A stretch of DNA of 63,695 nt, filler included, from Octopus bimaculoides (taxonomy: Eukaryota), in the NCBI RefSeq assembly GCF_001194135.2. It is 5 parts of 5 records of this genome, joined end to end, with 100 filler letters (N's around TTAATTAATTAA, not from the genome) between each part and the next. Parts side by side here need not be neighbours in the genome. Positions count along the whole stretch, not along the records: positions 20,423 to 38,817 come from NC_068985.1; 4 more parts are not named here. One strand, 5' to 3'. Of the stretch, positions 35,953 to 37,413 are shown piece after piece. The notes under the pieces were generated by a model. The model was not told the DNA's origin, made no database searches, and worked only from the letters and a program-made list of their open reading frames with translations. The first letter of the stretch is position 1. Each line of letters begins with the position of its first letter. Made by a program: the position numbers and the translations under genes.

Positions 35953-36646
35953 TCTTCTATTTTTTTTATTATTATAAATCTTCCTCTGCGGAGGGAACCG
36001 GTTTCCAACAATGGTACAAGGCTCCATCTCTGGGATGTAGCTAACAAAGACAAATTCACATTTGGAACTTGAGAAAAGTCCTGCATATTTTTACTGTTCC
36101 ACCCCACAGATTGCACTTGTAATGTATGGATCAGCCGGTCGATTTCTCTTTCTGAAAATCCCAGTTTATCCAGGCTTTCCTTTAAGTATTTACTAACAAA
36201 GTCTAGTGCTCTAATTATTATTAGTATGAATATGAATTCATAGTCTGGATATAGAAACTGGCGGTTTCGAAGCAGTTGTCCATAGATATCCTATTTTACT
36301 TTGATTCTCAGAGAGATATTTATATCTGCAAGGCAGCTAACATACCTTTACCCCTCTGTCCCAAACAACAATATCCGTCATGCTATGTTTACATTTGACA
36401 GAATGTTTTGATGGGAATATTCCACCATTATTCCTTGAGTTGGTGTTTATGAATGTATTCCATAATAGAGGGATTTTCTAAGTTTATTTCAGGACAGTCT
36501 TTTTCGCAGATGGCATTGTAAATTGTTTTAGCAACAACATCGTGCCGCATAGGGAGGTAGCACCGCGATGACATTTTAGGACAGTTGCTAATGATATGTA
36601 ATGTCTTCCACAGGGACATAACACAGCCTACACATGCAGTTGCACC
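35953..36646 (-). mobile_element. 5'-truncated RLE non-LTR retrotransposon (zinc knuckle, endonuclease, 3' UTR) within a (CATA)n array
   Basis: CRLC..EDIT/HIISNCPKMSSRCYLPMRHDVVAK...KCKHSMTDIVVWDR...YGQLLRNRQFLYPDYEF...GTVKICRTFLKFQM*; (TATG)n abuts both ends. Confidence 0.88.
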
Positions 36647-36710
36647 TATGTATGTATGTATGTATGTATGTATGTATGTATGTATGTATGTATGTATGTA
36701 TGTATGTATG

Positions 36711-37413
36711 TCATTATTCAGTTTATTTCAAGATTTCTTGCCAATAGAGAAAGATCCGGTTTCTAACCTAGATCCAAGGTTCCTTCATTGGAATTTCAAG
36801 ATCAACAGCAGGTTATGTATGTATGTATGTATGCATGCATGTATGTATGTATGTATGTATGTATGTATGTATGTATGTATGTATGTATGTATGCATGCAT
36901 GTATGCATGCATGCATGTATGTATGTATGTATGTATGTATGTATGTATGTATGTATGTATGTATGTATGTATGTATGTATGTATGCATGCATGTATGCAT
37001 GCATGCATGTATGTATGTATGTATGTATGTATATATGCATGCATGCATGTATGTATGTATGTATGTATGTATGTATGTACAGATTTGTATATTTTAGGTG
37101 TGTCTTCTCATGCATATAATTGCATATCTAGACATTCTCATATATATTCAAATGATAAACTTCTGGAAAGTTTTACAGATTTTTACAGTTCCAATGATGG
37201 ATTGGATTCTGTTTTTGAGAAGCCTAATTCCTCAAGATTGGTATTTAGGCATTGTGTTACATATCCCAGGGCCCCAATAATTACAGGTATAAACCTGAAC
37301 TTGTAATCTGGATAGAATAACTGTAGATTTCTCAATAGCTCAGCATAGGTGTTCTCTTTGTCACTGATCTTCAGCTTTATATTAACATCCGCTGGGCAGC
37401 TAATTTCTACAAG
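36711..37413 (-). mobile_element. Second 5'-truncated RLE retrotransposon; 3' UTR probably interrupted by expanded (CATA/CATG)n
   Basis: ORF 37183-37527 VEISCPADVNIKLKISDKENTYAELLRNLQLFYPDYKFRFIPVIIGALG..., then IIGTVKICKTFQKFII*; terminal piece at 36711-36813. Confidence 0.85.

What the first reader, a model, noticed from the sequence alone, without database searches (positions are those of the whole stretch)
35953..37413. RLE retrotransposon family apparently targeting (CATA)n microsatellites
Seen: two 5'-truncated elements with CCHC knuckle and RLE motifs have (TATG)n directly on both sides. Four 3' ends (35953, 36711, 24965, 25124) finish in sense orientation as ...GA|CATACATA or a CGTA variant, always the same polarity, and the three that can be read share a 3' UTR motif (ccttg...gaaaccgg). 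Known: several R4-clade RLE elements are microsatellite-specific (Dong on TAA, Rex6 on TA). Inference: a sequence-specific lineage for the tetranucleotide CATA, which I do not recall as a described target. It could feed on and expand the very abundant (TATG)n arrays of this genome. 36711-37413 may be one element rather than two.
Basis: partly seen in the sequence, partly recalled or inferred. Interest (0 to 1): 0.8.

Follow-up and report, generated by a model that had tools for sequence, protein, structure and literature searches.

The report
Retrotransposons that target CATA microsatellites
Broken copies of an R2-like jumping gene sit head to tail inside (CATA)n simple repeats of an octopus-type genome, and relatives elsewhere carry the same repeat on both sides, so this lineage seems to insert specifically into that microsatellite: a target I found no paper describing for this known kind of site-specific element.

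Summary
All elements lie on the minus strand.

- **Copy A (36646→35954):** a 5'-truncated copy that starts at the CCHC knuckle and carries a frameshifted RLE domain.
- **Second element (37413→36712):** one element, not two. An Octopus vulgaris copy is collinear with both halves, so the 266-bp CATA/CATG block is an expanded microsatellite inside its 3' UTR.
- **UTR-only copies:** two more lie at about 25.0 kb.

Every end abuts (CATA)n in the sense orientation.

Relatives from other assemblies settle the target-versus-tail question. Full-length and solitary truncated copies carry the same repeat at both ends. This is (CATA)n in several lineages, including ones only 36-38% identical in the RLE region, and (ACTT)n in one nested clade. 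No array lies on the opposite strand.

The predicted C-terminal domain fold matches the R2 endonuclease. A roughly 35-nt 3' UTR stem-loop is conserved, with compensatory changes.

Best reading: a Dong/R4-like lineage of RLE LINEs that is specific for (CATA)n.

Clade membership could not be tested by phylogeny. Repbase and Dfam could not be searched. Searchable papers list TAA, TG, TC, TTC, AC and ACAY (the APE-type Waldo) as targets, but not CATA for an RLE element.

The parts
37414..37464 (-). (CATA)13 array at the 5' junction of the upstream element. It is bounded on its far side by an unrelated Tc1/mariner-like remnant, so it is target-site repeat and not the tail of another copy.
   Evidence: TRF; sequence; no family stem-loop upstream; transposase remnant
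37148..37413 (-). Element 1, coding remnant. It is 5'-truncated and holds the C-terminal half of the RLE domain (LVEISCPADVN...IPVIIGALGYV...GTVKICKTF), with one frameshift. The stop codon TGA is at 37150-37148.
   Evidence: Translation; tblastn to P0001, P0203 and P0041; 93% identical to O. vulgaris L011 5150-5421
37080..37147 (-). Element 1, proximal 3' UTR segment. It lacks the stem-loop.
   Evidence: Alignment A1; collinear with L011
36814..37079 (-). Element 1, internal 3' UTR microsatellite of 66 units of CATA with CATG variant blocks. The same position holds only about 50 bp in the O. vulgaris copy L011.
   Evidence: TRF
36712..36813 (-). Element 1, distal 3' UTR ('B' unit). It carries the conserved stem-loop at 36749-36786 and ends ...aataatga.
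   Evidence: CM hit of 43.7 bits; 88% identical to L011 5425-5586
36647..36711 (-). (CATA)16 array between the two elements. It is the tail or target of element 1 and the 5' flank of element 2.
   Evidence: TRF, 100% matches
36056..36646 (-). Element 2 ('A'), coding remnant. It is 5'-truncated exactly at the CCHC knuckle and continues through RHD, PD, E-x-S and K..EK..Y of the RLE domain. It has at least 3 frame breaks or stops. The stop codon is at 36058-36056.
   Evidence: Translation; 68% identical to P0001; tblastn; the fold of the family's domain matches the R2 RLE
35954..36055 (-). Element 2, 3' UTR of 102 nt with the stem-loop at 35991-36028. It ends ...tagaaga.
   Evidence: CM hit of 40.1 bits; alignment A1
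35879..35953 (-). (CATA)~19 array at the 3' junction of element 2.
   Evidence: TRF
24966..25062 (-). UTR-only copy ('B2') of the element-1 family. Its stem-loop is at 24999-25036. It begins at the position where the internal microsatellite ends in element 1.
   Evidence: CM hit of 43.8 bits
24908..24965 (-). (CATA)n array at the 3' junction of B2.
   Evidence: TRF
25063..25121 (-). (CATA)n array with CGTA variants. It lies between B2 and the next copy upstream.
   Evidence: TRF; sequence
25122..25133 (-). Last 12 nt (gaataatgacgt...) of a further copy, cut off by an assembly gap.
   Evidence: Sequence

Best explanation
These are dead copies of two related families of a single-ORF non-LTR retrotransposon of the R2 superclade. 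The domain order is an N-terminal Myb-like region, then RT, then a CCHC knuckle, then a restriction-like endonuclease. The architecture and host point to Dong/R4-like elements. The lineage integrates specifically, and in one orientation, into (CATA)n microsatellites.

Shown:
- the anatomy of the copies and the RLE fold;
- the same repeat, in the same polarity, at both junctions of full-length and truncated copies in several independent assemblies;
- head-to-tail runs of copies separated by short arrays;
- a conserved 3' UTR stem-loop 47-94 nt from the 3' end.

Inferred, by analogy with R2 target-primed reverse transcription:
- The protein binds its RNA through the 3' UTR stem-loop.
- The endonuclease nicks the (TATG)n strand of an array.
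- The freed 3' end primes cDNA synthesis, probably helped by pairing with (CAUA)n carried at the RNA 3' end through read-through into the downstream array.
- Incomplete synthesis gives 5' truncation.
- The 5' end is joined inside the upstream part of the array.

Resident tails then serve as new targets, which builds tandem runs. In element 1's family a CATA tract inside the 3' UTR can expand (66 units here). It also explains the UTR-only units, which arise either by 5' joining at that tract or by unequal exchange between the tract and the tail.
For: - **Window anatomy:**
- **RLE fold:** an AlphaFold model of the 176-aa C-terminal domain (pLDDT 83) has R2 proteins as its top six PDB matches (TMq 0.64-0.70, E down to 1e-6). 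Other PD-(D/E)xK nucleases follow.
- **RT:** full-length relatives have RVT_1 and no APE domain. Their RT region is closest to R2 in the PDB (E of about 1e-21).
- **CATA at both ends:** L003 and L008 (full-length, two different samples), L007 (full-length, 66 units upstream and 34 downstream), the middle copy of L005, L015 copies 2 and 3, and window copies A, element 1 and B2.
- **ACTT at both ends:** L004, L006 and L013.
- **Octopus copies:** the 5' truncation point lies directly at (CATA)21 in L001 and at (CCAT)n(CATA)3 in L011.
- **Polarity:** every perfect CATA or ACTT run in 15 loci is sense to the element and adjacent to an element end. None is antisense.
- **Upstream arrays are not tails:** the covariance model of the stem-loop finds each 3' end it was built on plus four untrained ones (L005 844, L008, two in L015). 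It finds nothing upstream of solitary 5' arrays.
- **Stem-loop:** 81% of cells are paired against 62.5% in shuffles (0 of 500 reach it). All 12 pairs show compensatory changes, and slid controls give 28-52%. RNAalifold finds the same helix.
- **One element:** collinearity with L011 at 93% and 88%.
- **Literature:** Dong-R4 is the dominant RLE LINE class in octopus (PMC13282606; PMC10294476). R4/Dong elements lack N-terminal zinc fingers and carry a diverged Myb/SANT domain (PMC7998251). A conserved W..E.N.DL..CY...GY..RLK.LW...HPE motif is seen here.
Against: - There is no RT tree against R4, Dong, Rex6, HERO or NeSL references, so the clade is not established.
- The N-terminal motif gives no significant Myb hit with HMMER.
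- No HDV-like ribozyme was found at 5' ends by Rfam or by a crude descriptor. R4 and Dong have one (PMC3774820).
- Three old cephalopod copies deviate at the 3' side. L011 has only 'cata' once, L001 has (AT)45 followed by acatacat, and the Argonauta copy in L012 has catacacaca.
- Within the window itself, two of the three 5' arrays are simply the tail of the neighbouring copy.
- The hosts of most external loci are unknown.
- The sample is about 20 copies, not a genome-wide count.
- No biochemical evidence shows that the protein recognises CATA.
Confidence: 0.8

Rival explanations
1. Tail only. (CATA)n is a 3' tail made by the reverse transcriptase, or simply part of the element. Insertion is not targeted. 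Repeats at 5' junctions come from head-to-tail concatenation, either by template switching between RNAs or by insertion next to an older copy.
For: Many LINEs and SINEs end in microsatellite tails. Tandem runs are common here: the window, L005 and L015. In the window the 5' arrays of A and B2 are the tails of upstream copies.
Against: Solitary copies have long upstream arrays that no family 3' end precedes. These are L004, L006, L007, L013, L001, L011 and window element 1. Full-length copies are flanked on both sides. L011 has a 5' array but almost no 3' array, which is the opposite of what this rival predicts.
Confidence: 0.07
2. RNA-guided choice. Targeting is real, but pairing of the repeat at the RNA 3' end with a nicked or breathing array sets it, not protein recognition of CATA. 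The specificity would then perpetuate itself, because a copy sitting in an array transcribes that array as its own tail.
For: A CATA-type element (L007) and an ACTT-type element (L004) are 55% identical over RT-RLE and 59% over the N-terminal putative DNA-binding region. That is closer than L007 is to other CATA-type lineages (36-38% to P0001 in the RLE region). The stem-loop is shared by both target types.
Against: The ACTT type forms one clade in the NJ tree, with no frequent switching (no bootstrap). CATA specificity persists across very divergent lineages. R2-family proteins are known to read DNA through N-terminal domains and the RLE.
Confidence: 0.25
3. The roughly 100-bp 'B' units (36712-36813, 24966-25062) are independent non-autonomous elements, SINE- or SIDE-like, that the LINE mobilises. 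They would not be parts or truncation products of a LINE copy.
For: Two units start within 1-2 nt of each other and carry the whole stem-loop. B2 is preceded by another B end, not by coding sequence.
Against: In O. vulgaris L011 the same unit is contiguous with the ORF end, across a short internal CATA tract. The shared start coincides with the end of that tract. This fits 5' joining or unequal exchange at the tract.
Confidence: 0.15
4. Passive association. Copies survive preferentially in microsatellite-rich, low-recombination DNA, or they spread by recombination between arrays rather than by retrotransposition.
For: The piece is very rich in simple repeats. Waldo-A and Waldo-B in Drosophila were interpreted this way (PMC3812793).
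Against: Junctions are base-exact at the arrays. Polarity is invariant. Different copies have different 5' truncation points. The same pattern is seen in unrelated assemblies.
Confidence: 0.03

Closest known systems
Dong (R4 clade; Bombyx mori, Anopheles, Biomphalaria, ostracods, cnidarians)
   Same: Both are single-ORF RLE LINEs. Both insert in one orientation into a microsatellite. Neither has N-terminal zinc fingers, and both have a diverged Myb-like N-terminus (PMC7998251). RepeatMasker calls the abundant octopus RLE LINEs 'Dong-R4' (PMC13282606, PMC8967140).
   Different: Dong's target is (TAA)n. Here it is the tetranucleotide (CATA)n, with a sister clade on (ACTT)n. Dong has a 5' HDV-like ribozyme (PMC3774820), and none was detected here. 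Phylogenetic placement was not tested.
R2 (28S rDNA-specific RLE LINE)
   Same: The RT is the closest PDB match. The CCHC plus RLE domain has the same fold. The presumed mechanism is the same: 3' UTR RNA binding and TPRT.
   Different: R2 targets one site in 28S rDNA and has N-terminal zinc-finger and Myb domains. These elements have no zinc finger and sit in microsatellites.
Waldo (R1 clade) in Anopheles and Forficula
   Same: It targets ACAY repeats, which include the ACAT/CATA unit (PMC3812793).
   Different: Waldo uses an N-terminal APE-type endonuclease. The elements here have a C-terminal RLE and no APE domain. The resemblance is convergent.
HERO families of the leech, and Togen (NeSL-related) of fish
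   Same: They are RLE LINEs reported as microsatellite-specific. The leech HERO report is in Repbase Reports (repeat unit not given in what I read), and Togen targets (TG)n (PMC4640811).
   Different: They belong to different clades or targets as far as stated. I could not read the Repbase entries, so overlap with the leech HERO report cannot be excluded.
Kibi, Koshi and Mino (Tx1 and R1 clades)
   Same: They are microsatellite-specific LINEs targeting TC, TTC and AC.
   Different: They are APE-type and target di- or trinucleotide repeats.

Membership tests
RLE-type non-LTR retrotransposon (R2 superclade) | Reverse transcriptase domain of LINE type | tested here: met
   Not present in the window, because both copies are truncated downstream of it. 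Full-length relatives that share the C-terminal domain have RVT_1 (E 1e-23 to 1e-27). Their best PDB matches are R2 proteins.
RLE-type non-LTR retrotransposon (R2 superclade) | C-terminal CCHC knuckle followed by a PD-(D/E)xK restriction-like endonuclease | tested here: met
   C-x2-C-x8-H-x4-C, RHD, PD, E-x-S and K..EK..Y are present in copy A. The AlphaFold model of the family's domain matches the R2 RLE region (TMq up to 0.70, E 1e-6) ahead of other PD-(D/E)xK nucleases. A profile search puts the R2 CCHC/RLE region first, although E is only 0.33.
RLE-type non-LTR retrotransposon (R2 superclade) | No APE endonuclease | tested here: met
   There is no Exo_endo_phos hit in four full-length ORFs.
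R4/Dong clade | RT groups with R4 and Dong in a phylogeny | not testable with these tools
   No R4, Dong, Rex6, HERO or NeSL reference sequences were available. The assignment rests on architecture and on published RepeatMasker labels for octopus.
R4/Dong clade | N-terminus without zinc fingers but with a diverged Myb/SANT-like domain (PMC7998251) | tested here: inconclusive
   There is no zinc-finger hit. A conserved motif, RRNRDY..F.WT.ELN.DLY.CY...GYMKRLK.LWD..HPE...K.LR.Q, is present in 8 members. HMMER against Pfam and the PDB gives nothing significant. The paper needed HHpred.
R4/Dong clade | HDV-like self-cleaving ribozyme at the 5' end (PMC3774820) | tested here: inconclusive
   An Rfam E-value scan of five loci found only microsatellite artefacts (mir-297). 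A simple P1/P3/P1.1/P2 descriptor gave no hit at any 5' junction. Such ribozymes are easily missed.
R4/Dong clade | Site-specific insertion into rDNA or a microsatellite, in fixed orientation | tested here: met
Dong proper | Target is (TAA)n | tested here: not met
   Flanks are (CATA)n or (ACTT)n in every locus. No TAA arrays lie at the junctions.
R2 proper | Insertion in 28S rDNA, with N-terminal zinc finger(s) | tested here: not met
   Flanks are microsatellites. No rRNA hit appeared in the Rfam scan of five loci of relatives, L003-L007. There is no zinc finger.
Waldo (R1 clade, ACAY-specific) | APE endonuclease at the N-terminus | tested here: not met
   and the RLE fold.
HERO clade | RT groups with HERO | not testable with these tools
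   No references were available. Published octopus counts (Hero 13 recent insertions against Dong-R4 1129, PMC13282606) make it the less likely label.

The most novel reading that the evidence does not exclude
Target choice in this lineage is set mainly by base pairing between the repeat carried at the RNA 3' end and the array. The conserved stem-loop serves as the protein handle. The CATA-to-ACTT switch would then have happened by a change of tail rather than of protein. That would make these elements naturally re-addressable site-specific LINEs, and drivers of tetranucleotide array growth in cephalopod genomes.
Probability: 0.25. Interest if true: 0.75.

Novelty: new variant of a known kind. 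Interest (0 to 1): 0.5.

Why it matters
Site-specific RLE LINEs, with R2 foremost, are being developed for targeted DNA insertion. How their specificity changes during evolution is poorly documented.

This case offers a compact comparative system:
- close relatives (55% identical) that use two different tetranucleotide targets;
- a shared, covarying 3' UTR stem-loop;
- many high-copy families (100-400 members at 90% identity or more).

For cephalopod genomics, it says that part of the 'Dong-R4' load is confined to (CATA)n arrays. These elements both use and lengthen such arrays, for example 66 units inside one 3' UTR. That affects repeat annotation, assembly gaps and microsatellite markers.

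Tried and rejected
- **Pfam on the window's own fragments:** nothing.
- **Profile A2 for locus finding:** too diverse. The JGI metagenome scan with A3 gave only 3 loci.
- **Rfam scan for a 5' ribozyme:** only mir-297 artefacts on the arrays. A home-made HDV-like descriptor gave only AT-rich chance hits away from the junctions.
- **N-terminal Myb test:** not significant by HMMER against Pfam or the PDB.
- **Octopus SINEs as carriers of the LINE stem-loop:** the covariance model with filters off finds only the three LINE 3' ends in the piece. ARAGORN finds no tRNA in the SINEs.
- **An ORF at 23137-23514 that looked RLE-LINE-like by eye:** no tblastn support.
- **Cluster look-up for host names:** none were given.
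- **Literature:** the Kojima & Fujiwara 2004 paper is not held. Nine literature searches found no paper describing a CATA/ACAT-specific RLE element.

Full report
**1. What is in the window**

All elements read on the minus strand. In that orientation the 35.9-37.5 kb region runs as follows:
- a Tc1/mariner-like remnant;
- (CATA)13 at 37464-37414;
- an ORF tail, 37413-37148, encoding the C-terminal half of an RLE domain with one frameshift;
- 68 nt of UTR;
- a 266-bp CATA/CATG array, 37079-36814;
- a 102-nt unit 'B', 36813-36712, ending aataatga;
- (CATA)16;
- copy 'A', 36646-35954;
- (CATA)~19.

Copy A starts exactly at a C-x2-C-x8-H-x4-C knuckle. It runs through RHD, PD, E-x-S and K..EK..Y to a stop at 36058-36056, with at least three frame breaks. 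It has a 102-nt UTR ending tagaaga.

At about 25.0 kb a second B-type unit (25062-24966) sits between two (CATA)n arrays. The last 12 nt of a further copy precede an assembly gap.

TRF confirms the arrays. The shared UTR motif occurs three times against zero in shuffles. tblastn finds no other coding remnant of this kind in the piece.

**2. One element or two**

An Octopus vulgaris locus (L011, OX597824) is collinear with both halves of 36712-37413. It matches the ORF tail and proximal UTR at 93% and unit B at 88%. There the two parts are separated by only about 50 bp of CATA-like repeat.

So 36712-37413 is one 5'-truncated element whose 3' UTR holds an internal microsatellite, expanded here to 66 units. 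The two copies are truncated at different points, so they are independent insertions.

B-only units begin where that internal tract ends. This fits either 5' joining at the tract or unequal exchange between the tract and the tail.

Copy A belongs to a second family without the internal tract. It is 73-76% identical to L001 and L002.

**3. What the protein is**

The window fragments alone give no Pfam hit. Copy A is 68% identical to an intact 176-aa ORF (P0001) and also matches O. vulgaris predicted proteins.

HMMER against 1.8 billion representative proteins finds 1910 relatives. These include ORFs of 1083-1139 aa, with members up to 1208 aa. They contain RVT_1 and no APE domain. Their RT is closest to R2 among solved structures.

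An AlphaFold model of the C-terminal domain (pLDDT 83) has R2 proteins from zebra finch, turtle and silkmoth as its six best PDB matches. TMq is 0.64-0.70 and rmsd is 3.1-3.9 Å. Other PD-(D/E)xK nucleases follow. The 'RLE' call is therefore sound.

The N-terminus has no zinc finger. It carries a conserved motif resembling a Myb/SANT repeat. This is the architecture reported for R4/Dong (PMC7998251). HMMER does not confirm the Myb assignment.

**4. Target or tail**

I fetched DNA around 13 relatives (12 by exact-protein look-up) and took 3 more loci from one metagenome scan.

CATA on both sides, sense polarity:
- L003 and L008: the same full-length family from two samples, with different 5' junction details;
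- L007: full-length, 66 units upstream and 34 downstream;
- L005: three copies in tandem separated by 42 and 58 units;
- L015: three copies in tandem, from a lineage only 36% identical in the RLE region.

L014 (38% identical) ends in (ACAT)n at the contig edge.

ACTT on both sides: L004, L006 and L013. L009 shows ACTT at its 5' end only.

In O. vulgaris, L001 is truncated directly at (CATA)21 and L011 at (CCAT)n(CATA)3.

Every perfect CATA or ACTT run in all loci is sense to an element and touches an element end. None is antisense or free-standing.

A covariance model of the 3' stem-loop marks every recognised 3' end, including four it was not trained on. It finds none upstream of the 5' arrays of solitary copies. 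Those arrays are therefore not the tails of neighbouring copies.

Exceptions are three old cephalopod copies with decayed or minimal 3' arrays. The tail-only reading is therefore unlikely.

**5. Conserved RNA element**

A stem-loop lies 47-94 nt from the 3' end of both CATA-type and ACTT-type elements. It has an outer stem NNNNCC/GGNNNN, a TT/C internal loop, a 6-bp inner stem and a TTGTT or AGGTT loop.

On 13 sequences, 81% of cells pair against 62.5% in shuffles. All 12 pairs show compensatory changes, and slid controls give 28-52%. RNAalifold predicts the same helix.

One caveat applies: I cut the alignment windows by eye. The untrained CM hits in L015 (E 2e-5 and 2e-4) are independent support.

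By analogy with R2 and with stem-loop-dependent LINEs, this is the likely handle by which the protein picks its RNA. That is an inference.

**6. Evolution of the target**

In an NJ tree of the RLE region the four ACTT-type elements form one clade. That clade is nested among CATA-type lineages (no bootstrap, 176 aa). This suggests CATA is the older target.

A CATA-type and an ACTT-type element are 55% identical over RT-RLE and 59% in the N-terminal region. The switch therefore occurred between fairly close relatives. Whether protein or RNA-tail pairing sets the specificity remains open.

**7. Comparison with what is known**

Searchable literature lists these microsatellite targets: TAA (Dong, RLE), TG (Togen, RLE), an unspecified repeat for leech HERO, AC (Mino), TC (Kibi), TTC (Koshi) and ACAY (Waldo). 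The last four are APE-type (PMC3812793, PMC4640811).

Octopus repeat papers report abundant, recently active Dong-R4 LINEs: 5 families and 1129 recent insertions in O. vulgaris. The passages my term searches returned do not mention a target.

I found no paper describing a CATA/ACAT-specific RLE element. Repbase, Repbase Reports and Dfam could not be searched.

Membership in the R4/Dong clade is inferred from architecture and host, not from a tree. The 5' HDV-like ribozyme known for R4 and Dong was not detected, which is inconclusive.

**8. Verdict**

This is a widespread lineage of RLE LINEs specific for (CATA)n, with a daughter clade on (ACTT)n. It is represented in the window by two dead truncated copies and two UTR-only copies.

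It is a new target variant of a known kind of element. It is of moderate interest to specialists in site-specific retrotransposons and cephalopod genomes. The source genome is inferred to be an octopus from the nearest matches.

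Noticed in passing
window 37575-37870 (minus strand): Frameshifted C-terminal remnant of a Tc1/mariner-type DDE transposase (FWPPNSQDCNPMDYYVWG ... RFRNRVEDAVEAEEGNFH*). It abuts the (CATA)13 array upstream of element 1.
   Followed up: partly
window 32940-33187 (minus) and 33653-33810 (plus): Two SINE-like repeats with tRNA-like B boxes. The first has (CATA)17 at its 5' side and a tail of (acat)2 gcat (acgt)5 (agat)16. 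The second ends in (TGTA)n/(TG)n in its own sense, which is the opposite polarity to the LINE tail. Neither carries the LINE stem-loop, and ARAGORN finds no tRNA. SINE tails may be a second source of the genome's TATG arrays.
   Followed up: partly
window 20423-38817: All 13 perfect (CATA)>=4 runs of the piece lie on the minus strand, including the two arrays not next to an RLE element (33191-33254, 33816-33863).
   Followed up: no
window 36814-37079: The internal 3' UTR array has CATG variant blocks at about 36834-36841, 36894-36917, 36986-37009 and 37030-37049. This hints at growth by duplication of multi-unit blocks rather than single-unit slippage.
   Followed up: no
L007 1446-1506 and 5808-5868: The CATA-type element, together with its arrays, lies between two copies of a roughly 60-bp unit (atcagcaaggctgagtctctactggactacacc...ggtgctgg). 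Each unit is preceded by (GATA)n. This may be another repeat family or a local duplication.
   Followed up: no
L003 about 550 and L008: In the copy read (L003) an in-frame TAG separates the N-terminal Myb-like region from the rest of the ORF. Other members of the same 90% cluster (P0370, P0375) have one 1208-aa ORF.
   Followed up: partly
L012 2904-2986 (Argonauta hians): A UTR-only unit with the stem-loop and a tail of acacacatacatac(atc)n lies upstream of a longer copy of the family. UTR-only units therefore occur in argonauts as well.
   Followed up: no
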